DNA of 61,686 nucleotides, filler included, from Choristocarpus tenellus KU-1152 (lineage: Eukaryota > Protista > Phaeophyceae), in the NCBI GenBank assembly GCA_964200185.2. It is 6 parts of 6 records of this genome, joined end to end, with 100 filler letters (N's around TTAATTAATTAA, not from the genome) between each part and the next. Parts side by side here need not be neighbours in the genome. Positions count along the whole stretch, not along the records: positions 32,310 to 47,053 come from CAXNAD020001121.1; 5 more parts are not named here. One strand, written 5' to 3'. The translations under genes and the position numbers were made by a program. Below the pieces are notes generated by a model. It did no database searches. It was not told the DNA's origin and was given only the letters and a program-made list of their open reading frames with translations. This document shows, piece by piece, positions 32,310 to 47,053 of the stretch (positions within the stretch are counted from its first letter, which is position 1; every line of letters begins with the position of its first letter).

Positions 32310-32360
32310 GGTCATGGTGTGTCTTCGGGACGTCTAAATCGTCGGGGTACGGAGGGAAGT

Positions 32361-32415
<55 letters not shown>

Positions 32416-33423
32416 ACTTAGGCGCAATAAAGTTCCAAGAATTTTCTGTTTTGTCAGAGGGTAATCAAGGCATACCCTCTCGACTCTTGTCATAGTCACA
32501 AATTCTACACTTCAATGCAGTCCCGTTCACGCAATTTCCCCAGCTACTCACTGTACATTGCCTCTTGCTCTGGTGACGAAGGCGCTATAGCTGTCCTGGT
32601 AATAGCAATAGTTACATACCACAGTCCCCAAACATACTGAAGGGTGCTCAGGGTTAGGGCTAAGTCAGCAGCAAATCTTCAAAGTCAGTGAAGGTGTGCA
32701 TGAGGGTATGCCGGTACTCTTGTCTGTGTGAGGACAATGAGAGCCAGTCCATGAACACAAACAAACACAGAATGGACCGAATCTCGGCATGGTGAAAGTC
32801 ATTTCCTCTAGAAATTGCCACACCTCCCCAGGAGAGTTGGGTTGGGAGGGTTTTGATCTTAGATGTTTGACAGCAGCATCCACCATACGCATGGTCGAAA
32901 GACTTATTTCTCTCTTTCTCTTTACTCCAAGACAGATGATACAACAACAACAACAAATTCTCAGAACTATTTAAAAAAAAAAAATGAAAATAAAAACAAA
33001 AAGCGACGGACTTGACGAGGGGGTGGGGGGNNNNNNNNNNAATCATATATAGTACTAATGAGAAGAAAGCGAAAATCTTGTAGTCTTGGCGCTGGGGTGG
33101 TTTGAGGGTGTTGGGGTTGAGGAGGTAACTTCAAAACTACAACCCGTTTGTTGTATTGATAGATAGTATGATGCAAGACTTGTTGCAGCTATTGTGTATC
33201 TCAGGAATCACAGGCGTGCATCACAGGCACCGCCCTAGTGTTCGTAACACCCCCCCCCCCCTCAGAGACTGACATCTCGCCCAGTATCACATAGCCAGGC
33301 TCGAACTTCCCAAAGACAAGCCCTTGCGCAGCTCACGTTTCCAACCTCAACAAAGTGCCCCTGATTTGTCTACAGGTGCACAGCACCAATAGTGGAAACA
33401 AGGGGGGGGGGGGATGGTCGCAC

Positions 33424-35847
33424 ATGTCTCCACAAGGTAGCCAACTCTTTGAGTGGCCCGACGTAACAGCTCAGCATTCTTCTCCTGTTCCCAGGCATGG
33501 TAGCGCACTAGCCCCTCCAGCGAGGCACACTCTTTCAATTTCCTTGTGTGAAAGTTTCCATACTGGTACCACAGTGGCACCACCGCATTGATATAGTAGC
33601 AAATTTAAGAAGGCGGTGTCGGTGGTGGTGAGAAGAGGGAGGAAGGGGTGGGAATGGGAGGGTAGGGTATGGTGGAGGAGGGGCGGATTATTGTCGCACT
33701 TGTCAACATTGCGTGTGACTTGAGCATTCTGCAGAGGAACATGTTACTGAAGAAAAATATTGAGGCGTTTTGCTGGTGGGTGGAGAGCACGGTATGTCTG
33801 TGGGAGCAGTCCCAATTGAACACAATCAGCCCGCACCAATAATGTGGTGAAAGTGCATGGTTGAAACAGTTTGGCAGTATGCTATACCATCCCGGACAAG
33901 CCCGCAGCTGTTGCTGATAGAGAATGGCTAGTAATCTCCCTCCCACACTCCCTTCCCTTGTACCCCCTGGTATGCATAATACATGCTATTGTTACAGCAA
34001 TACACCCAACCCTTCGCAGCTGGGTTGCACACCTTCTGCACCAGCACTGGTCTTCCCTGTCGATCATAGGGTAATATGTAATGGGGGTAATATGATCTGC
34101 ACAGATGCTCAAATGTCTCAGGGCTCACACAACCTAAGACCTGCCAAGGCTCTGTTTTCAGCAGTGCTGCCATGTCTGACTTCAGGCGCCATGCCAAGTT
34201 CTCTTCCACCTGGTGAAGGCATACCCGGATAGCAGTAAAGAGGGAATTGTGGGGGCAATTGGAGGGGAACAGGGGTGGAAATTAAGTAGGATCAACTGCA
34301 AAAAACCAACAAAAAGTAATGCTTAGGGGGGAGTCTTGTTTAACTGGGTATCTTTCCTACCTGAGTGAGACCATTGATTAAACTCTTGCATGGATGCGCT
34401 GGGCTCCATGCAAAGATCAAATTCTTGTGTGGTATAAAGAATGGTGTAAGAGATTAAAACCCCATATGATCATTGCAGGCGTGCGGTAAGTTACATGTAT
34501 AGGTAGCTTATCTAAAACTACAATATCATACATGTCTTGTACCGGAGAAGGACACAGTAGTCAACATATTGACCTTAACATGATCCAGTACACCAGGCAT
34601 AGAACACAATAGTTGAGTCTTCCAGGAGCAACTCATCACAGAAGTAGTGATAAAAAGCAGTGACTAACACAGGATGAGGGTTAGGAAAAGTCAACCTTAG
34701 GTTGGGAGTAGAGGTCGGCAGGGGTTACCTGTATGCGTCCACCCAGCAGATATCACTGTCCATAACTCACTCGAGACATCAACTGGGATAAAGGGGCTGC
34801 AATAACACTAGTTCAAAAATCAAACATGATTTACTCTTCTAAAAACAAGCCTATTTCGTAATGTATATGGGGAACTACACCGATCCATTGATTATCTACA
34901 AGCCATGGGTTTACCGTATACGCCTGCCCAACAAGACTTTACCCAATCCAAAAAAGGTCAGGACTTACTGGCTACGCGCGATATAAATCTCAGACTGTGA
35001 GGTTATAGCCAAGTTGTGTTCGCAGCAAACCAGCTCAGCCACTGTGGCGGAGTAATTTGAGTGCCTCACATTGGAACCGCTTGTCCAATGAAGATAACTT
35101 CGAGGCTCTTAGGGTACACCACAAACAAGCCAATTTCCATGTCAGCATTTTATCCCGACCTCACAACAACTGTACCTGGAAACGCGTCTTCTCCACATCC
35201 CAGTTGTTATGTCTCAAGAAGCGTAGGAGAGCCAGGTCATGATCTTCTATTGGAGAGGCAGATCCGTCTCCCACAATAGGTGATAGGTCGATCCCCGTCT
35301 TCCTCACCCATTCCCACAATGTATGGAGGGAAGCCTGGGAAAGATCGCAGACAAATAGGAATTGACCATGACCAGCAAGTTGCGCAACCGTTATAGTAGT
35401 CCAATATCGAGGCATAGAGCAAAAAACTTGGGAGTCTAGTAGAGAATGGCTTCACGAGGGTCCAACAAGAATAACAGTAGTCTGGAATGCAACAGGCAAC
35501 GAGGGAAATGTGGCTGTTCCCTTGCACTTCAAGTTGCATGCAACTTAAAGGACCCCAATCAACCAAGGAGGGTGGCAAACTCGCTGATGAAGACGACCAT
35601 TTGAGGGATTGGTGCCACTAACCTCTTGCGATGGGTTAAGTTTTCCCCTGTATCCTTCTAGCTGGAAGGACGGATCAAGGGGACTGTAACCGAACTTGTA
35701 TTCCTTTCTATGATCGACGTTCGACTGTGAACGGTCAGGGACTGCGACATCGGTAAGTTGTACCATCTCCTTAGTGTCAGCCCGTGCGCGACGAGCAGCT
35801 ACAGACCCTCGTTTCCGCATTTGCTTATGCCTGCTGTGTACTCTCAT
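33424..35847 (-). CDS. SEC14/CRAL-TRIO lipid-binding protein (3' part not resolved)
   Basis: Exons 35623-35847, 35176-35334, 34033-34209, 33424-33562. GYRGKLNPSQE/ASL..L, HDLALLRFLRHNNWDVEK and NLAWR form the CRAL-TRIO N domain. YYPHYILPYDRQGRPVLVQK/YG and LVRYHAWEQE follow. Confidence 0.88.
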
Positions 35848-36875
35848 GCTAGCCGTAGAGATAGGTGTCACAACACAACACCCGCATCAACAAGACCTAT
35901 ATTAGTAGACCTACCTCCTACCACCTATAAAATACCACCTACGTCCCAATATGAAAGACGTCATTCAACTGAACACTTAACACAACTCATTGGTCAAGGA
36001 GATAAAGAGTCAAACCCTTGGACCAACTACAATAAAATATACTACTCTTTTTGTTGTAGTTGGGTTCATACAAAAAGGTATTGTTATAGTAAAATAAATA
36101 TCTATATAAACCATCAAAGTAGAGCTCTGTAGCACTTCATATTGCGCCCTGTGGTGAAAGATGGTCGATCAGAGCCTACACTTAAATCAAGTGTTTTCAG
36201 TACTCTTCTTCCCCACAAGTCCTCACCGTGAAACCACATCATATCAGCACATTTCAGCGACTAACAGAGTGTGGGAAAGTAAGGGGTCGACCCTTGCTAG
36301 ACCCAGGTTTGATCATTGTTTTGGGAAGCCCTATAAGGTCAAATGCGATGAATTTTTGATTTTGGCAGCTCTGGAGGAGGTGGGATCAGTCCAGGTGGGC
36401 AACGATATCTTTTAGAGGGAAGGGTGGGGACAGTGAGGGGCATGACTAGGAAGACCGAAAAATATTTTCGGGGCTACTCGTCACTGTATCGCTTGAAAAT
36501 GTTGAACTAAGCTATTAGTTTGAAATTCAAGTTGCTGGGATGTAAGCTGGCACGACAACGATGTTAGATCTTTCGTTGGTTGCAGTATCCAGGGGATCGT
36601 GCAAGAAGATCCATACCTCGGGTATGTGCCCTCCAAGCGCTTTCCCCATGATCTCGGGATTCGCCACAAGTATGGTGTCACGTTTCCTCGATCGACCAAT
36701 CTGTATGCCACAAGTACTTGAAGTCTATGAACATAGCATACCTAACTCCTACCTTGACATCCTGGTCTTCAAATAACAACTTTCTCTACCTCTCATTTCA
36801 ATTTTTTCGATATGGTCCTAGGGCTGGTGCAAAGCTTTTACTTGGATCATTCGAGATCGGTTAGGGGAAAACATA

Positions 36876-39800
36876 ATGTCGGATTTGAGGCTAGCTACCC
36901 CACTCGTGGGACGTCCTGGAGGATCCACAGAGGATGGGCCGAGCCAGATATTCCCCGTAGCACCACTTTCGCCGAATGCCCCACACTCAACTATCGTCGA
37001 CGTCGTGGAGACTTCGGACGAGCTATCTCCTCCAAAGCGCCCGAAGCCGTCGGTCAATGAAGCTGCTACTGTAGGGGATACAACACCTGTTCGCACATCT
37101 CCAGCGTACGCTTCGCCTAACTCCCCCGGCTTCTCCTACAGGACTACAACTATTGAAGTTAACCCTGAAAAGATCGACCTAATGGGAATGTTAGAGGCGG
37201 AGGCAGGTATTGTGCGGTGGGTGCACGGGGGTTCCCGAACAGAAGGCGTTGAGGTGCCAACTGCAAGGAATGCAGGGTATCACAGGGAAGCAAGCCTTGC
37301 GCAGGACCTCATCGTCAGGGTGGCATCTTCTGCCCTTCCTGGGCCTGTCATCTTTGGGCTTGAAGCTGGTAAACCTTATGAGACAGAGTTTACACTTCCA
37401 GGGTGTTACACCTTCGAAGTGTTCAAGTCTCCAATCTGGACAGGCTCTTTTGCTGTAAGAAAGGCCTGTAGTAATCCGATAGCTCTAGGATCTACCCCAA
37501 AGAAATCTTCATTACAAGACGGTGGGGTTCTCGAGGTAGGGCAAGCTAAACTTGAAGGGGAACTTGGGGAACCACTGATAGAAGAAATCTTGCCAAAGAG
37601 TGAGAACAAGATGGGACCATATGCACAACAGGATCCAGTGAATATTTCGGTTGCGCAGGAAGTGGACAGTGGCGGGTGCATTTTTTCGGATGAGGAAGAA
37701 ACTTCAACTGACTGCGATGGAGGTGATGGAGAAGAGGAAGATGCACAGCCTCAGAGTGTGGCAGACATATCAGAGGAGGGCATACGACAGGATGAAGCAG
37801 AAGCAAAGGAACCTTTCCTCTATGGAAGAGAAGATTTGGTGGAGCAACCTTGTGGGAAAGACGATGAGAGCGTGGGCTTGATGTCCCTCCCAGCAATATG
37901 CCCAACACAATATTTATCACTCCCTGTTTCTGAGAGTAGTGAGGCAGTGGTGCAAGAGGGGCTAAACGCTTCTGAGGGTGAATCACTGCTAGATGTGCAA
38001 GACAACAGTGAGGCTACAGGGACTGCTTCTTTGGAAGAGTGTGTGGGATCAGGAGATACTAGTCTGCTGCCTGTTCCAATAGCTGATTGTGCAAGGGAGT
38101 TTAGGGATCAGGGTAGAGATGGGGTGGAGGATTCAACTCTTGATTTTCGCAAAAAGCATGCAAGAAATGAGCCACTGGAAAAGATGTTGGGGGGAGAGAT
38201 GCAGGAAAATGTAAAACAGGCTTCAGCAATCAAACTGGTGCAGACATTGTCACCCTCAATGGGTGATTTTAGGGATAGAAAAGATATAGGACAACTCATG
38301 CCACAAAAAGAGGGCGAGGGAAAGGGGGATGGAGCATTGAGGGACTCTGATGACAATCAAACTGAAAGAGTCATCGAGATCACAGTTCAATATACAGAGG
38401 ATGCGTATGAGGATATGCAGCAAGTGGCTTGGTGTGTACCAGGAAGTTTACCTGAAGAAGTTGAGGTAGAGGAGAATGTACTACTGCAAGAAGAAGTGGG
38501 CGTGGCTTTGGAGCAACAGGGGGTGACCAAGGAATTGGGAGGTTCCTTGTCTACAGTGGATGTGGGAGATATTTTGCCACAGCAGGATGATGGGGATGCA
38601 TCAAGCAGTTTTGGACCTGAAAAGGATAAAAATGGGGACACTCTATCGATACAGCATTCGAAGGAGCTCTTGCTCTTGGGGAAGGAGGAGGGATTGAAAG
38701 GAAAAGAGGACGAGGATGTTTCAACTCCCCCAGCTTCACCTTTGCCCCTTGTGCTCCCCATGGCTCTCACCCAGGAGGTTGAGGCAATTGTGATGGAAGG
38801 GGTCAAAGGGGAAATGCCTGAGTTGGAGGGGGCTGATGGAAAGATAGACTCGGGGGAGGGACAGAGGGAGGAAGAGGTTTTGGTGGCGTTGACAGAGGGG
38901 GGACACGAGGAAGAAAAAGGGGAGGGAGAATTGGTTGGTGCCAATACTAAAGGCCTGTCAACTCCTGTTACAACTGAAGTTGGTCGGGTTTCAATGGTGG
39001 GGGCATCAACATCAGAGTTGTCTCCTTCACCATCCCACCCCTCCACCCTGCATGTGTCGCCATTGAGTCTCCACACTGCCAGCAAGGGAGCTTTGGTACC
39101 CAAACTTGACGGTGACACTGACAGGGATGCCCCAGGTTGTAACAACAAGAGTCCAAACTTGAGCTCAAACCTTGTGAATTGTGAAAAAGGCAGCTCAAGC
39201 TTGGTCAGCTCTGATGGAGAGCATGCTGCCAGTGTAGCAGTGATCCGTGGAGGACACCTGGACATCAACCCCCTGGTGACTGAAAGCAGGCAATACCGGT
39301 TCCCCTCGGTTGTTCTGGTGCCAGAAGGAGTGAATGTGACCCAGCAACTGGACCAGGCTGATTGTGCAGCGCACCATCCTGAGGACACAGGCTTGATGTT
39401 GCAGTCTAGCTCACCGCTTGTGCCACCTATCCAACCCCTCCAGCAGCGGCTGCAAGTTCTTGAGAGGGACGGGAGTGGGGATGAATGGCGACTGAGCAGT
39501 CCCCTCCAGTCACCTGCACAAGAAATGGGTGATGACATCAAGTTCACCAGCATGGAGGTGCAACAGATATCCAAGGCCCATGGTAGTGGCCACATTCACA
39601 GCATTATCTCAGAGGAAAATGAGCTACAGGAGGTAACCAGGGTGAACAAAACAGCAATGAAAGATGTGGTTGAGGCTGGAGGGGTAAGTACTGCACCTAG
39701 ATATTCCTTGCAAGGATCAAAAGGGGAACAGGAAGAACAAGGTGGCGGCAATGGTGAGATGGAGGGGAGGAAGGTTGAGATTGTTGTGACAGGCGCATCT

Positions 39801-42800
39801 CCTACAGTGGCAACTCCTGTGGATGATGCATCCACCATGTCTGCTGTTGTCCCTACAATCTCACAAGTTATTGGTACTAATATATTTGATCACACGCAAA
39901 ATGTTGTAGAGGTGGAAAAAGCAGCAGTAGTGGGAAGGGTGAATGAAGCAGTGGTGGTAGCAGTGATGAAGGCTGGAGGGGCAGGGGGACCGGCAAGGCA
40001 GCAACAAGAGGGACGAGATGATGGGTGTGTGTGTGCTGAGGACATGAAGGTGGAGAGTGTGTTGATGAACACACCTGGTGAAGTTACAACTGCAAGAGAA
40101 GATGCATCAGATGTTTACCTTCCTACTACAACAGATGTCACCAGCACGGCACTGTCTGACCACCCTCACAGTAGTTTTGAAGAGGAAACAGAGGAAGATG
40201 AGGCGGTTGATGTGATTGAAACATCTATGGTAGCGATGACCAAAGCTGTAGAGGCAGACACTAGAAGTGAAGAATCTTCTGGGGGAGCAGGGGGGGAACG
40301 ACAGGATGAACAAGATGGTGGGCACGAAGAGGGGGAGGAGAAGGAGACTCAAACTGCTGCGTTGAACACTCCTCCTAGTGCCTTGTTAGCTGTTGGTGCG
40401 ATATTGCCTGCTTGTGCTCAAAGTGTTATCCGAGAGGTATCAGGAAAAGCTGAGGTGGCATTGGCGAATATAACTGTGGTGGCAGCAGCATCTGAGGTTG
40501 GAGGGGCAGGGGGAGAAGGGGGAGAACAACAGGAAGGTGAAAAAGAAGAAGTTGAGGGAAATATGGCGAAGATCGGAGCCACAGACACACCTTCCACAGT
40601 AGCAGCTGTTGTAGACAATGTGTTGACAGCGTCTGTTGTCCTACCTTGTACTTTGGAGATCATCAGCACAGCCCTGCCTGACCACAACCATAGCAATATT
40701 GCAGAGGTGACAGGGGTTAGTGAGATGACTGGGGAGAATGGTTCAGTAATGATTGGAGCTGGGAATTTAGGTTCCAAAGGTGAAGATTCTGTAGGGGATA
40801 TAGGGATACCAGGGAGGAAAGAAGAGGATGGACAAAGTGGAGACGAAAAGGTAAAGGACGGGAAGGGGGAGGTTGTTGTGACAGGCATACATCTTGCAGT
40901 GATGTCCCCACTGGATGATGCATCAACCATGTCTGTTGTCCTCCCTTCTCCCTCAGAAGCCATCAGTACTGCCCTACCTCTCCCTACTGGGAGAGAACTG
41001 GACATTTGCTATTCTCCTTCTGTACCCCCCAATGACAACCCTTTGAGCACACATGACACAGTGACTACCTTGGACAACGAAAACTCAACTCCAGAAAAGG
41101 GGAAGGTGGAACAAGTAAACATCTCACAGTCACGTGCTGTGTCTTCTCCCTGTCAGTCGTCTCCCCCAACCTACCCTGACCCTGGCCCCACTCCTCCTAG
41201 AGAGATACTGGTGGAAGTGGTCAACATGGGCAGGTTCATGCCATCAGAGATAACTATCTGCGTTGGGAGCTTGGTCAAATTCATTGTTCGTGCTGAGCAT
41301 GGATCTGAGGAGCATGAGCTGGAGGGTCGTAGCTCCATTTGGGCCCTGCGTTTTGAGTCAGGCTTGCTTCCCAATAACGGTGACACATTCTGCTGGTGCC
41401 CAAAGGTCCCTGGGAGTTTGAGAGTCCGGTCCAACGTCTATCGTGATGCCCAGGGGTGTCAAATTACTGTGTTGGGAGAGGGGGTTTCTGCTGGAGAGGA
41501 TGGTGGAGTGCCCCCTGTCCATGGTCGCAACAGCGGAAGGTTCCGGCAAAGGGGTGGTGGAGGTGGGCCGCCAGGCAAGGTTGGTGGACGTAGTGCAGGT
41601 GGGAGGGGGGCTGGAGGAAGGGCAGGGGGGGCTGGGGGAGGGAGCGGACGGGGGGGTAATGCCTCCAAATGGGCAGCAAAGTCCTTGATGGCCTCTGTTG
41701 ATGAAGTGCAACCAATTTCACCTAGTTTGAATTCAGGTAAGAACAACAAAGGACCAACTGCAGTAGGCGTAATGGGTGCTACAGTGGAAGTGGTGGGGGC
41801 AGGGACAGCTACATTGCCAAAATCCCCTTCATTTATTAACAGGACACCTGGGGTTCTCCACAACACTGCTATCTATGCTGATGATGGGCTACCTGGGCAG
41901 GAGAGCAAGATTCCTATTATGGGGACACATTTGGTAGTGGTCCAGAGCCCTGGTAAGGGCATTCAGCCTGCAAAGCTGTGTGTTTCTGAGGGCTCAATGG
42001 TCACCTGGGTGCGAGAGGAAATGACTGGGTCTCCAAAGCACGAGACATTCAAGGTAGAGACAAGCAATGGTAACATTGTGTTTGAGTTTCAACTGAGTCA
42101 AGCTTTTCCCAGAGCCCAACACACTTTTGTATGCCCTGGTAGCTACATTGTGACAAGTGAGACATACACATTTATCCAGGGAGTGATACTAGTACAGGAG
42201 GGTGGAGGTGATGACCCTGGATCAGATGCCAGTAGTTTCGATGATGAGGACAGCATACCCTCTGTTTTTCAAGACCAGAGTGGGCCTCACTGTGGCTCAT
42301 GCTCCTCTGCCACTGCTGTATTGCCACAAGTGAGCAATGCCACCCGTTTGATCTATAGCAGTGCTGTCATAACAACCAACAACACTGTCTCTGTGGCAGT
42401 ATCTTCCAGTGCTGTAGCTGTCCCAGTGGTCTGCCATGCGACCGCTACCAAAGCCACTGGCTCTTCCGCAACAGCAACTTTGATCCCAGCACCGGCAGTA
42501 ATTGCAGAAGCGACTTCAAAAGTGTCTGGGCCCGACCACTGTGGTCATGGAGGTAGTGAAGTTACTCTCCCTATGGCTGGGTTGACAAAAAATGTTTCAG
42601 TTGTGTCAAGGAGGGACCCTAATCCTGCGTCAAATAGGGCAGGGGATATCACCTTCTACAGCCAGGCCACATCCTGTGTGGCTGCAACCTTGCCCTCACG
42701 TCTCAGGTCAACCTCCCTGCCAGAGGTGTGGCTATCCTGCAAGGACACCAACCATAGGATTGGTGATGGTGGAAGTGGAAGGAGTGGTGATGGCAACCTC

Positions 42801-45800
42801 AGGACTGGAAGTGGAGTTGTCAATAGAGTCGGTGCGACTAGATTGCGTGAAATTCAGCGTTTTACCCCACACAGTGATATGCTGGGAGGGGAGGGGTGTC
42901 AGAACCGACCAAGGGCAAGGTCATCATCATGGGCAGTCACACCAAGAGATTCGAGGTCACAAGTGAGGCTGGGGGTCGGGGGAGAATCTGATGTTGCATC
43001 TGAGGAAAGGAAGGGAAGCTGTGGCATGAAAGGGATTGCGGTCCTTGCCCCATCCATCACACGGTGGAGCAACAGGAACACCAATTTGGTGAATGAGGTA
43101 GGTACGAAGGACATCAGTCAGACTGGAGGCATGGGGGGTGGTGGCGATGGAAGTGACAGAGACATTGGTACCAGGGAGTCCGATGTGGCTACTGCTGTTG
43201 TCAAGAGGGTCCTCGATGAGGTGGGACAGCAAGGTTCTGGTCCTGGGGAAACAGAGGCGGAAGAGGTGTTGAAGCGGAAGAAAAAAAAGAAAAAATCGAA
43301 AAAGAAAAAACCTCTTGGGAGTGGGGATTCAAATTTGGTGTCTCCAACTGTCAAGGAAGTGGAGGGGGAAGGGAGTGAGGGAGGACAGGCAGTGCAAGGA
43401 GATTTCCATAGCCCAGCTGCAAGTTCTCATACAAGCAACACTACAGTCCCTCCTATTTTGAGTGGAGCAGAGGGGAAAGTGCTTCAGGAGATGGAATCAG
43501 TTGCCCCATGGGATGCCCCAACAAAGACCATTGTAATAACCAGCATGGGGTTCAAGTCACAAAAGAATCAGACTGTGGAGGAGGGGACAATCTTGGTGTT
43601 CATGATGGGGGCCAAGATGCGAGGACATCCTGCTGATAGTAGAGAGCACAGGATTGTGGTGTCTGGACCGTTTGAGACAGAGGTAAGTCCATCTTCCCTC
43701 CACCTACCCCTCTTTTGCCCTTTCCCCCTTAGCATACACAGCATACCAAAACTGAGTAGACTAAATAATATAACACGGTAAAAGGAACAGATGTGCCAAA
43801 GACGGTGACAAAATGGTCCCTCCCCAAAAGTGCACACCTCCAGCACTCAATTTTTACCTCAAAGTCTATTATGCCCTTTGTGACCTTGACACAGACCTCA
43901 CAATGATTGTAGTGCAGGTGGTGGGGGCTCTGCTCTAAAGGCTTGTTTAATCTCTCAAACTCCTCACTTCTCCTGTGTTTTTTTTGCATACATCTTACAT
44001 AAATTCACAAATAGGACCCAAATAATTTAAGAGGGTAGGGCAGCGTCTATTCGGGGTCATAAATCCAATGTTGCAACTTTGATTAATTTTGGCTATCGTG
44101 TTTGATAGCAGGTGTCAATATCCTTGCTTCTAACACACCTTTCAAAGTTCTATACATTTTAGGTAACGTCTCAAACAGAAAACCGAAAAAGGACATAAAA
44201 AACCCGTGGGAAGCCAAGCCCTGAACAGACAAATAGGACAAAACTCCTACCCTCTTAAATGCTTTGGGTTATAGTTGTCAAATCCCTTTGCGGTGCAATT
44301 TTACACCTTTGCTACGGATATTAGCCACATTTTCTGGAAGCAATATATATGCCTATGCCACGAGAATGTAAGAATAGAGCTCAAGGCGTTAACTAGTACT
44401 TCTACTGCATTATTATTGCTGCTATAAAAAATAGTATGTTTGATGTAAGAGAAAAACCCCCAATAGAACGTTCTGATCTAGCACTTTTCTCCTCCCCACT
44501 TCTCTCCACGAGAAACCCTGAAATTTATTTTTTTTTGGGGGGGGTTGTAGATTCTCCGCTTGTGGATTTCCGCTGTTTAACCTTAAAAATGATACGATTA
44601 CCATGTTGAATCTTTTTGATCATTTTCTCCTGATTGCTTCTTGATCTGTGTGTGTGTCCAAACAACAACCATTCACTTCTCCCTGCCCTTGCCCCCTCTC
44701 AACATAGGAGGTTGTGGGAGATATAATATCCCCCTAGTCGTTGACACCAGCAAATACTTAGAGCAGTCTTTGTGTCGAAATTCTCTCCTGTAAGATGTAG
44801 AATTAAAAAGAAGTTATTGACCACGGATGGATAGTGTTTCTGTGTTCTCCAAGGGAGTGCTAGGAACTGCCTTTTGTGTGTAATTTGAGAGGGGGTTAAT
44901 GGGATTTTAAAATATAGCAATTGTAGTTATTGGTTTTAACTGTTAGCCTCCGCCACTCCAGTTTGGACCACCTCAAAAATTTAGTGATGACCCTGCAGCC
45001 TTTTAGCGTAATTTGTATCACAGGCCTTGCCCTGTAACAGCGAATATCCATCTCACTCCCTTACTATTGGCTTTCTTTGTCCACTAACTTATCTTAACCC
45101 CTTTTACACAGTTACCTCCCACCCTTGTCCCACTGGGTCATCAGGTTGAAAATCTTGGATGGGCTAGGGATCCTGCCAACAGCACAGTTATTAATATCAG
45201 CCCTGCAATGCCTGAGGGCTCATCACTTCCCCTGTCAAAGCCCGGCCACTATGTCTTGTCGGACTACCTCCTCCACAAGCGCGTGTTTTTCACTGTTCCT
45301 CCTTCACCTTCCTCCCTTGCCTTAGCTGCAGCAAAGGCTACGATCGCAATGAAAGAGACAGAGCTGACCACTGGGGGTGGTGGGGTTATGGGAGAACCTC
45401 AGGGAAAGGATGGAGAGAGAGATGGGGGGGGGGACAACATGAGTGTTACGGTGGCTACCACAACTGCCACAGAAGGCAACTCCGACCCTGGAGCGTCCTC
45501 AAACAAGAAGAAGAAGAAGAAGAAAGGCAAGGGAAAAGTATTGATCCCAGGGACTGCGTCAAGGACTGGTGGATCAGAGGCTCTAGTGGTGGAGAGCTTG
45601 CCTGTGACAAATGACTTCCTGGTGCCAGCCAAGGGAGGTGATAGTAGTGGGCTAGAAGGAGGGGAGTACAATGTAGTAGCTGCCAGGGTCACAGGGGTTG
45701 ATCGCCTGGTATCATCACATGTGCCAGTACCAGTGCGAGCCCTTGCAGGTTCCATTGCATCCTCTGAAGATAGGGAGAGCATCGGCAAGGAGGAGCAGGA

Positions 45801-47053
45801 GGTGCTTGAGGCTGGTGGAGCTGTGGGCAGGACAGTGCTGTCTCACAAGGGTTTTGCACCTGATTCGCTGGAGATTAGCCTCGTCCCGGGACTGGGTGCC
45901 CTGGTGTGGTGTGAGCTCGAGAGACATGAGAAGGTGGCACGGGAAGTGCGATGTCAGCCAGTGCAGGAATTGCAAGGGGGACCCTCAGAGGGGAGTGACT
46001 CTAGGACAGCCCGCCTGGCACCTGGGTGCCTACGTGCGTGCCACTTTGTTTTGAGAAAGCTGGGCCGGTACCGCTTGGTCAACAGTGAAGTTGGGAAAGA
46101 GCTGATTGTTGTGGTTGGTACAACCAAGAACGGTGGGAATGTGGGGGCGGCACCTGCTCTACTGTCTGGCAACGCCGATGTAGGTGTAGAGAGAAGAGAT
46201 GTAGTGACTGAGGTGAGGAAACAGGGAGGTTCTAAATTTGCAGCCGGAGAGATTGGAGTGGATATGGCAATGAAGCAGGTTTCCTCTCAGGCTGCAACAG
46301 TTCAGTGTCCATTACGGAGAGAAGGGGTTGATCAGGAGGGGCATCACAGGTCAGTGGGCAGGTTTCATGGCAACAGCAGGAAACCCCACAGTGCTGAAGA
46401 AGGAAAGGAGGATGGTGAAAAGAGGGGTTTCAAGGGGGGTGAGAGGGTGGATGTGGAAAATGCAGAATCAACCTCTGTTCTTTGTGTTGACGCTGATGCT
46501 CCTGGTCCAGTATCTGAGGATCGTGCCATTACTGCAGCTGTTGCTGTTGCTGCTGCTCCAGACGCTATCAATGTGGATGCCGATCATGCCTTTGCTAAGA
46601 CACTTCAAGAGGACTGGGCAAGGTCTGGGGGGGATGGGGCGCACGAAGACAATGATGAGGGAAAATTCGTGCAGCAGAAAGCCCACATCAAGCGATCCAA
46701 GCGCAAGGCAAGGCTTGATGAGCGGGCAGCTGCTGCTGCAGCTGCAAAGCAACTTGAAATGCAGGAAAAGAAAGTTGCAGCTGCAGTAACACAAGGGTCG
46801 ATAGAGGAGGTTGGAAGTGTTACCACCACTGCAACCGCTGGTGCCTCCACTTCTTTGCAGACCTCTACAACTGCCTCTACTTCTGTAGTTGGACGGCGCT
46901 CAAGACATGAGCTGAAGGGGGAACCCTGGTTGTCTAGAGGGCACAGTGGTGGGACTGGGCAGAAAGAAGGTGGTTGGGAGGGGGGGTGTACTGGTGGGTT
47001 GAGCAAGGACAGTTCTCCGGGAGTTGGAGGTTCCAGCAGCACTGAAAGCAACT
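36876..47053 (+). CDS. Giant (at least 2,916 aa, 3' truncated) low-complexity protein with about 5 cupredoxin-like domains
   Basis: Exon 36876-43682 (2,269 codons, ends GAG/gtaagt) splices in phase 0 to exon 45112-47053+ (cag/TTA CCT), which is in frame with the 45208 ORF. Long acidic/Gly-rich linkers separate recurrent beta-sandwich segments such as FMPSEITICVGSLVKF..H..GDTF..PG and IQPAKLCVSEGSMVTW..HTFVCPGSY..GVILV. Confidence 0.85.
39630..40985 (+). repeat. About five degenerate ~85-100-aa coding tandem repeats
   Basis: Recurring GGAGG..E/Q-rich..VVVTG..DDASTMS.V.P...ISTAL.DH. The DNA gttgtgacaggc..ggatgatgcatcMaccatgtctg is shared between ~39783-39853 and ~40875-40945. Confidence 0.7.
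44015..44270 (+). mobile_element. MITE family A, copy 3 (intronic)
   Basis: GACCCAAATAATTTAAGAGGGTAGG...CCTACCCTCTTAAATGCTTTGGGTT with a colinear interior. Confidence 0.85.

What the first reader, a model, noticed from the sequence alone, without database searches (positions are those of the whole stretch)
36876..47053. Giant beads-on-a-string protein with about five copper-ligand-less cupredoxin-like domains
Seen: a 6.8-kb exon plus an exon of at least 1.9 kb, in a genome whose other exons here are 15-350 bp. The product is at least 2,916 aa and mostly disordered-looking (E/G/S-rich). Five ~90-110-aa beta-rich islands sit at ~37143-37460, 41202-41474, 41925-42197, 43521-43682+45112-45297 and 45825-46116. 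They follow the plastocyanin/cupredoxin pattern (V.V...GF.P..L.V..G..V.W/F...H....F..PG.Y....G.I.V). Established: type-1 copper sites need His...Cys-x2-His-x(2-4)-Met. Seen: the equivalent loop reads SNVYRDAQG, SETYTFIQG, VFKSPIWTG, SDYLLHKR or NSEVGK, so Cys/His/Met are lost, while the first His persists in three domains (EEH, PKH, REH). There is no signal peptide or TM segment. Inference: an intracellular scaffold reusing the cupredoxin fold as a non-redox interaction module, an architecture I do not recognise.
Basis: partly seen in the sequence, partly recalled or inferred. Interest (0 to 1): 0.8.

Follow-up and report, generated by a model that had tools for sequence, protein, structure and literature searches.

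The report
Giant disordered protein with copper-less cupredoxin domains
A transcribed gene, probably from a brown alga, encodes a mostly disordered protein of at least 2,905 residues that carries three clear (perhaps five) small cupredoxin-fold domains lacking their copper ligands; this architecture has not been described, and its function is unknown.

Summary
The observation largely holds. ORF 36876-43781 is real. That contig runs about 2.1 kb past the end of the piece. The product is at least 2,905 aa, with no convincing signal peptide or membrane segment.

- **Islands 1-3:** these are divergent cupredoxin domains. A profile of islands 2+3 reaches prokaryotic multi-cupredoxin proteins. Profiles hit pseudoazurins and plastocyanins in the PDB. 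Island 3 models as a cupredoxin sandwich (pLDDT 85, Z 11.5).
- **Island 4:** its first half matches the profile in register (1 of 500 shuffles).
- **Island 5:** the match is marginal and the model failed.
- **Copper site:** Cys, the second His and Met are lost in every island. The first His is kept here but is Asn in the relative.
- **Relative:** the only eukaryotic relative found is an unnamed protein of the brown alga Discosporangium. It conserves islands 1 and 2 but not the spacers.

An RGG box and lysine runs suggest a nuclear scaffold, but this is inference only. I rate it a new variant of a known fold, of moderate interest.

The parts
36876..43682 (+). Long exon, 2269 codons from the first ATG to the donor
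   Evidence: ORF. Donor GAG|GTAAGT. RNA-like contigs cover 41100-41596 and 41649-43680. An upstream exon is not excluded.
43683..45144 (+). Intron, 1462 nt, GT..AG
   Evidence: Joint in run X3: contig of 6080 nt, depth 62, no X3 depth over 44284-45079. The 755-aa call in the collection fits it exactly as 665+90 codons.
45145..47053 (+). Second exon, 636 codons, cut by the end of the contig
   Evidence: Open frame. The RNA-like contig covers 45143-47053 and runs 2137 nt further.
37131..37475 (+). Island 1, a divergent cupredoxin-like domain with no copper ligands
   Evidence: 34% identity over 133 aa to Discosporangium P0004. Its profile hits plastocyanins at E 5e-4. hhalign against the cupredoxin alignment gives Prob 80%, E 1.4e-5. 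0 of 500 shuffles reach its score.
39591..40979 (+). Degenerate repeats of about 100 aa inside the acidic spacer (aa 906-1368)
   Evidence: blastp of tiles: 29-45% identity, E 3e-10 to 5e-5. DNA repeat families with spacings of 297-525 and 1092 nt.
41190..41495 (+). Island 2, a cupredoxin-like domain: His kept, Cys to Ser, His to Tyr, Met lost
   Evidence: z 9.3 against island 3. 43% identity over 97 aa to P0004. Prokaryote-only cupredoxin HMM gives 1e-8. Alignment A4.
41523..41660 (+). Gly/Arg-rich RGG-type box between islands 2 and 3
   Evidence: Translations. Net charge +10 and 25% Gly in aa 1501-1650.
41910..42215 (+). Island 3, a cupredoxin-fold domain: His kept, Cys to Ser, His to Tyr, Met to Ile
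   Evidence: HMM 1e-9. Model pLDDT 85. Foldseek top hits are all cupredoxins. VIA-align Z 11.5. Atlas hits.
43272..43310 (+). Lysine run, NLS-like (aa 2133-2145)
   Evidence: nuclear targeting is inference.
43506..43682 (+). Island 4, first half (before the intron)
   Evidence: hhalign E 0.0026 in register with profile columns 9-49, His aligned with the first ligand. 1 of 500 shuffles reaches its score.
45145..45303 (+). Island 4, putative second half (after the intron)
   Evidence: Only the PGxY motif aligns in register. 53 of 500 shuffles reach its score, which is not significant.
45505..45525 (+). Second lysine run
45808..46146 (+). Island 5, a possible degenerate cupredoxin-like domain; not established
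   Evidence: hhalign E 0.04 in register over 35 columns. 6 of 500 shuffles reach its score. No atlas hit. Single-sequence model pLDDT 39.6.

Best explanation
One transcribed gene encodes a protein of at least 2,905 residues, with its C-terminus beyond the contig. The protein is mostly acidic, Gly/Ser-rich disordered spacer. At least three, and possibly five, small cupredoxin-fold beta-sandwich domains are embedded in it, and they have lost the type-1 copper site. Selection acts on the domains and not on the spacers: the Discosporangium relative keeps islands 1 and 2, while the stretch between them is about 240 aa there and about 1,250 aa here.

Most likely mechanism (inferred, not shown): a non-secreted, probably nuclear scaffold. 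The copper-less sandwiches would serve as binding modules. The RGG box and charged spacers would provide RNA or multivalent weak interactions. The lysine runs would provide nuclear import.

Separate confidences: gene model and cupredoxin homology of islands 1-3 about 0.85; copper-free about 0.75; nuclear scaffold role about 0.3.
For: **Gene**
- A 2301-codon ORF.
- A GT..AG joint 43682|45145 in an RNA-like contig that lacks the intron.
- The three calls in the collection are all in this frame. They are separated by in-frame, stop-free gaps of 138 and 90 nt that are not GT..AG.

**Fold**
- Islands 2 and 3 are alike (z 9.3).
- Their profile finds 10 prokaryotic proteins that carry Pfam Cupredoxin_1/Copper-bind domains, at whole-library E 9e-6 to 9e-4 among 1.8 billion proteins.
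- PDB profile hits are exclusively pseudoazurin, amicyanin and NirK for islands 2/3, and plastocyanin for island 1.
- hhalign of island 1 gives E 1.4e-5.
- Island 3 model: pLDDT 85; Foldseek E 8e-7; Z 11.5, rmsd 2.2, 86 residues aligned.
- Spacer controls show no signal.

**Ligands**
- Alignment A4.

**Conservation**
- tblastn to L001 aligns only islands 1 and 2.

**Location hints**
- No membrane segment, an RGG box and lysine runs.
- The relative P0004 also lacks a hydrophobic N-terminus.
Against: - Pfam itself does not reach significance: Cupredoxin_1 scores 12.8 bits against a cut-off of 27.
- The island 3 model used an alignment containing true cupredoxins, so it is not independent of the sequence homology.
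- Island 4b is not significant, and island 5 is marginal with a failed model.
- Run X3 is labelled '?', so calling it RNA is my inference.
- The N-terminus may have an upstream exon, which could carry a targeting signal.
- No evidence bears directly on localisation, partners or metal content.
Confidence: 0.6

Rival explanations
1. The domains still bind a metal, or a small ligand, at a remodelled site. That site might use the retained His with the Ser and Tyr that replace Cys and His, so the protein would be a metal buffer or sensor and not an inert scaffold.
For: - His aligns with the first copper ligand in islands 2, 3 and 4a.
- Islands 2 and 3 share the same Ser and Tyr replacements.
- Cupredoxin_1 proteins with atypical Cu or Zn sites are among the structural matches (4hcf, 4hcg, EfeO 7wgu).
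Against: - In the Discosporangium island 2 the His is Asn and the Tyr is Phe.
- Island 1 has none of these residues.
- The positions are therefore not conserved across the family.
Confidence: 0.15
2. This is not one giant protein. The region holds several shorter genes or a heavily spliced gene, as the three separate calls in the public collection suggest, and the long ORF is partly non-coding.
For: - The collection lists three products of 1227, 379 and 755 aa on this contig.
- Transcript and DNA contigs break near 41597-41650.
Against: - All three calls share the single frame.
- P0001 has neither a start nor a stop.
- The gaps are in frame, stop-free and not GT..AG.
- The RNA-like contig starts inside the second gap, at 41649.
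- The break lies in low-complexity GGN repeats and occurs in the DNA runs too.
- A 2301-codon ORF cannot arise by chance.
Confidence: 0.08
3. Only three cupredoxin-like domains exist. Islands 4 and 5 are unrelated beta-rich or partly ordered segments that merely resemble the loose pattern.
For: - Pairwise comparisons are not significant.
- Island 4b is reached by 53 of 500 shuffles.
- Island 5 has no atlas hit, hhalign Prob 1%, and a model at pLDDT 39.6.
Against: - Island 4a matches the N-terminal half of the profile in register (E 0.0026; 1 of 500 shuffles).
- Island 4b carries PGxY at the right place.
- Island 5 matches in register with 6 of 500 shuffles.
- Four spacer controls give nothing.
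Confidence: 0.35

Closest known systems
Prokaryotic multi-domain Cupredoxin_1/Copper-bind proteins (hits P0005-P0017)
   Same: They have tandem cupredoxin domains of about 90 aa, and they are the best sequence matches to islands 2 and 3. Some of their domains also lack Cys, His or Met, for example P0005:28-127 and P0006:241-330.
   Different: Those proteins are short (330-1,055 aa) and tightly packed, and most of their domains keep the copper site. Here the domains lie hundreds to more than a thousand residues apart in a eukaryotic disordered protein, and none keeps the site.
Type-1 blue copper proteins (plastocyanin, pseudoazurin, amicyanin)
   Same: Same fold: Z 9-11.5 with rmsd 2.1-2.9 in the rows shown. 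The PGxY...G..I.V pattern before the last strand is shared.
   Different: They are single-domain, targeted electron carriers with His, Cys, His and Met ligands. Here three of the four ligands are replaced, and there is no convincing targeting signal.
Copper-less cupredoxin folds reused for non-redox roles: E. coli SufI/FtsP (PMC2661564), ephrin ectodomains (PMC6485061), plant early-nodulin-like phytocyanins (from my own knowledge)
   Same: They are precedents for the fold surviving loss of the copper site and acting in protein-protein contacts.
   Different: All of these are exported or membrane-anchored, and they are compact. None is a string of domains within a giant intracellular disordered protein. 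No sequence relationship to them was seen here.
Discosporangium mesarthrocarpum unnamed protein CAM9586331.1 (P0004)
   Same: It is the only eukaryotic relative found. It has islands 1 and 2 in the same order (34% and 43% identity), acidic and Gly-rich spacers, and no hydrophobic N-terminus.
   Different: The spacer between islands 1 and 2 is about five times shorter. The model is 775 aa and its contig ends 960 nt after it, so any later domains are unknown. It is also uncharacterised.

Membership tests
Cupredoxin fold superfamily (Pfam PF13473 Cupredoxin_1 / PF00127 Copper-bind) | Greek-key beta-sandwich of about eight strands that superposes on solved cupredoxins | tested here: met
   Island 3 only: eight strands, pLDDT 85; Foldseek E 8e-7; Z 11.5, rmsd 2.2, 86 residues aligned. 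The alignment used for the model included true cupredoxins. Islands 1, 2 and 4 were not folded. The island 5 model was unusable.
Cupredoxin fold superfamily (Pfam PF13473 Cupredoxin_1 / PF00127 Copper-bind) | Score at or above Pfam's gathering threshold | tested here: not met
   The best result is island 2 against Cupredoxin_1: 12.8 bits against a cut-off of 27, E 0.12. The whole protein has no hit at E<=1.
Cupredoxin fold superfamily (Pfam PF13473 Cupredoxin_1 / PF00127 Copper-bind) | Statistically supported profile-level homology to bona fide members | tested here: met
   Islands 2/3: whole-library E 9e-6 to 9e-4 against 10 proteins with strong Pfam cupredoxin domains, and reverse HMM 1e-8 and 1e-9. 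Island 1: hhalign E 1.4e-5 and PDB plastocyanin E 5e-4. Islands 4 and 5 are inconclusive.
Type-1 (blue) copper proteins | Ligand set His ... Cys-x2-His-x(2-4)-Met | tested here: not met
   In alignment A4, Cys is Ser, the second His is Tyr (Phe in P0004), and Met is Ile or falls in a loop with an insertion. Only the first His remains, and it is Asn in P0004. Island 1 has none of the ligands.
Phytocyanin / early-nodulin-like proteins | N-terminal signal peptide and an extracellular, often GPI-anchored, location | tested here: not met
   The N-terminus is not hydrophobic, and the maximum 19-residue hydropathy is 1.79, inside a degenerate repeat. This is a heuristic only, and the 5' exon structure is uncertain.
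Multicopper-oxidase-like proteins (such as SufI/FtsP) | Three packed cupredoxin domains matching the Cu-oxidase Pfam families | tested here: not met
   No Cu-oxidase hit. The domains are separated by spacers of 140 to 1,250 residues.
RGG/RG-motif proteins | A cluster of RGG/RG repeats in a Gly-rich tract | tested here: met
   41523-41660 encodes a Gly/Arg tract with several RG and RGG units. RNA binding itself is not testable with these tools.

The most novel reading that the evidence does not exclude
A brown-alga-lineage nuclear condensate or chromatin scaffold. The dead cupredoxin domains may descend from a prokaryotic multi-cupredoxin protein. They would act as the specific binding 'stickers', spaced by rapidly expanding disordered linkers, an RGG box and degenerate repeats. 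This would be a new use of the cupredoxin fold inside the cell, and a domain family restricted to this lineage.
Probability: 0.15. Interest if true: 0.7.

Novelty: new variant of a known kind. Interest (0 to 1): 0.45.

Why it matters
Cupredoxins are textbook electron carriers that act outside the cytosol. If the reading holds, this protein would show the fold stripped of its metal site and reused several times inside a giant, apparently non-secreted disordered protein of a multicellular lineage far from animals and plants. It is also a practical annotation point. The public calls split the gene into three unnamed fragments, and no Pfam model recognises the domains, so a family model built from these islands would recover them in other stramenopile genomes. 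The function remains open, so the finding is a lead and not a result.

Tried and rejected
- **Pfam on the whole product and on each island:** nothing significant.
- **PDB phmmer with single sequences:** only weak hits.
- **Word-index protein search, three times** (long ORF region 1430-1790; P0004 region 30-460; exon 2 region 1-340): only the query's own cluster was found. These searches are limited by candidate length and were swamped by low-complexity words, so a blank means little.
- **Metagenome scan:** With the island 2 pair, 190 pattern matches were found but none was confirmed.
- **hhalign of island 1 against the islands 2/3 trio alone:** not significant. It became significant only against the 22-row alignment.
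- **Island 5:** the atlas feature search gave no usable hit, and single-sequence AlphaFold gave pLDDT 39.6, so no fold search was attempted.
- **Other scans:** Tandem Repeats Finder found nothing and Rfam found nothing.
- **Synteny:** tblastx of the upstream 4.5 kb against the Discosporangium locus found none.
- **Rejected readings:** an Ig domain for island 3 (Pfam 'ig' E 0.12, against consistent cupredoxin evidence), and introns at the two gaps between the public calls (not GT..AG, in frame, and partly present in the RNA-like contig).
- Each half was tested by reference on its own.
Full report
**1. What is in the sequence**

The piece (32310-47053) is a complete public contig of 14,744 nt. 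The + strand carries an ORF of 2301 codons, 36876-43781. A consensus donor (GAG|GTAAGT) lies at 43682/43683. A second frame is open from about 45112 to the end of the piece. An ORF of this length cannot arise by chance in DNA of about 50% G+C.

**2. Transcript evidence**

Three runs from one study hold the stretch. Their contigs were laid on 41100-47053.
- Runs X1 and X2 cover the intron, as genomic DNA would.
- Run X3 has no depth over 44284-45079. One X3 contig of 6080 nt (depth 62) covers 41649-43680, jumps to 45143-47053 across a GT..AG joint (cut +2), and continues 2137 nt beyond the piece.
- The intron is therefore 43683-45144 (1462 nt).
- A second X3 contig of 4922 nt covers 41100-41596 and extends upstream. 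If it is collinear it would start near 36675, about 200 nt before the ATG.
- I infer that X3 is RNA; the record gives no kind.

**3. The public gene calls**

The collection lists three products on this contig: 36215-40322 (1227 aa), 40461-41597 (379 aa, P0001, with neither start nor stop) and 41688-45414 (755 aa).
- All three are in the frame of the single ORF.
- The gaps between them are 138 and 90 nt. They are in frame, stop-free and not GT..AG.
- The X3 contig begins inside the second gap. That gap encodes a GGN-rich tract where the DNA contigs also break.
- The 755-aa product equals 665+90 codons, exactly as expected for the 43683-45144 intron.
- I read these as fragments of one gene. The first call starts 661 nt upstream of the ATG, so an upstream exon cannot be excluded.

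**4. The islands**

*Pairwise similarity.* With shuffles, only islands 2 and 3 are demonstrably alike (z 9.3; 31% identity).

*Exhaustive profile search.* A profile of these two, searched against 1.84 billion representatives, gave 17 hits at E<=1e-3.
- One is the gene's own fragment.
- One is a 775-aa unnamed protein of the brown alga Discosporangium mesarthrocarpum (P0004).
- Ten are prokaryotic proteins with several strong Pfam Cupredoxin_1/Copper-bind domains.
- Five are repetitive or low-complexity proteins with no Pfam cupredoxin domain, which I take to be spurious.

*Reverse and PDB searches.*
- An HMM built only from those prokaryotic domains scores island 3 at 1e-9, island 2 at 1e-8, island 1 at 6.5e-3, and P0004's two islands at 3e-6 and 2e-5.
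- Against PDB sequences, the islands 2/3 profile hits only pseudoazurins (twelve at E 0.01-0.05, over the whole domain), followed weakly by thrombocorticin, amicyanin and NirK.
- The island 1 profile hits only plastocyanins among E<=1 matches (best 5e-4).
- hhalign of the island 1 pair against the 22-row alignment gives Prob 80%, E 1.4e-5 over nearly the whole domain.

*Structure.*
- The protein-language features of island 3 point to Copper-bind clusters (0.91).
- Folded with the 22-row alignment, island 3 gives eight strands, pLDDT 85 and pTM 0.76.
- Its Foldseek and VIA-align matches are all cupredoxins: E 8e-7, and Z 11.5 with rmsd 2.2 over 86 residues.
- The atlas search gives TM by query 0.76-0.81; three of the seven rows shown carry Cupredoxin_1 or Copper-bind domains.
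- Because that alignment contained true cupredoxins, the model corroborates the sequence homology but is not independent of it.

*Islands 4 and 5.*
- Island 4's first half aligns in register with profile columns 9-49 (E 0.0026; 1 of 500 shuffles reaches its score).
- Island 4's second half aligns only at the PGxY motif (53 of 500 shuffles).
- Island 5 aligns in register over 35 columns (E 0.04; 6 of 500 shuffles). It has no atlas hit, and its single-sequence model was unusable (pLDDT 39.6).
- Four spacer controls gave no signal.
- Overall, three domains are established, a fourth is likely, and a fifth is possible.

**5. The copper site**

In the alignment with true cupredoxins:
- The His of islands 2 and 3 stands in the column of the first ligand.
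- The Cys column holds Ser.
- The second His column holds Tyr.
- The Met column holds Ile, or falls in a loop with an insertion.

In the Discosporangium island 2 the first His is Asn and the Tyr is Phe. Island 1 has none of the ligands. A conserved type-1 site, or a conserved replacement site, is therefore unlikely.

**6. Conservation and the rest of the protein**

tblastn of both exons against the Discosporangium locus aligns only island 1 (34% over 133 aa, E 2e-9) and island 2 (43% over 97 aa, E 8e-18). The stretch between them is about 240 aa there and about 1,250 aa here. The islands are the constrained parts and the spacers change freely.

The spacers have these features:
- They are acidic as far as about residue 1500.
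- They contain degenerate repeats of about 100 aa (aa 906-1368).
- A Gly/Arg RGG-type box lies between islands 2 and 3.
- There are two lysine runs.
- No hydrophobic N-terminus or convincing membrane segment was seen. The one borderline stretch is a copy of the degenerate repeat.
- P0004 likewise starts without a hydrophobic stretch.

**7. Explanation**

*Shown:* one transcribed, spliced gene; cupredoxin homology of islands 1-3; loss of the copper ligands; conservation limited to the islands.

*Inferred:* the protein stays inside the cell, probably in the nucleus (lysine runs, RGG box). The copper-less sandwiches would act as binding modules on a flexible multivalent scaffold.

*Rivals:* a remodelled metal site; several genes in place of one; only three true domains. 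These are weighed in their own sections.

**8. Comparison and novelty**

The fold and its copper-less derivatives are known: SufI/FtsP (PMC2661564), ephrins (PMC6485061) and, from my own knowledge, plant early-nodulin-like proteins. Prokaryotic multi-cupredoxin proteins with some ligand-less domains are the nearest sequences.

What I could not find is this architecture. Neither Pfam, the PDB, the protein libraries nor the literature searches describe cupredoxin domains spread along a giant, apparently intracellular disordered protein.

The family appears to be lineage-restricted, but the libraries hold few brown-alga proteomes, so its absence elsewhere is weak evidence. I rate it a new variant of a known kind, of moderate interest.

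Noticed in passing
window 44004-44281 (inside the intron): A 278-nt element with 36-nt terminal inverted repeats (83% complementary). Summed contig depth there is hundreds of times that of the flanks in all three runs, and many contigs diverge at its edges. It looks like a very high-copy MITE-like transposon.
   Followed up: partly
window 33928-35415, minus strand: Short ORF pieces resemble a Sec14/CRAL-TRIO lipid-transfer protein. Only CRAL_TRIO_N matches, at E 0.0048 and below Pfam's cut-off. This suggests a neighbouring gene with short exons on the opposite strand.
   Followed up: partly
window 36215-45414 (L002 3906-13105): The public collection splits this gene into three unnamed in-frame partial products (1227, 379 and 755 aa). 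The gaps between them are 138 and 90 nt and are not introns. The breaks coincide with repeat or low-complexity sequence.
   Followed up: yes
window 39591-40979: About four to five degenerate copies of a unit of roughly 100 aa lie inside the acidic spacer (29-45% identity).
   Followed up: partly
P0005:28-127, P0005:263-356, P0006:241-330 (prokaryotic hits): Some domains of prokaryotic tandem-cupredoxin proteins also lack the Cys, His or Met ligands. Copper-less domains within cupredoxin arrays are therefore not confined to this eukaryotic protein.
   Followed up: no
window 32319-32495: A run of about 50 G/C bases reads as poly-Gly on one strand and poly-Pro on the other, at the very start of the contig. 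It is low-complexity sequence of unknown meaning.
   Followed up: no
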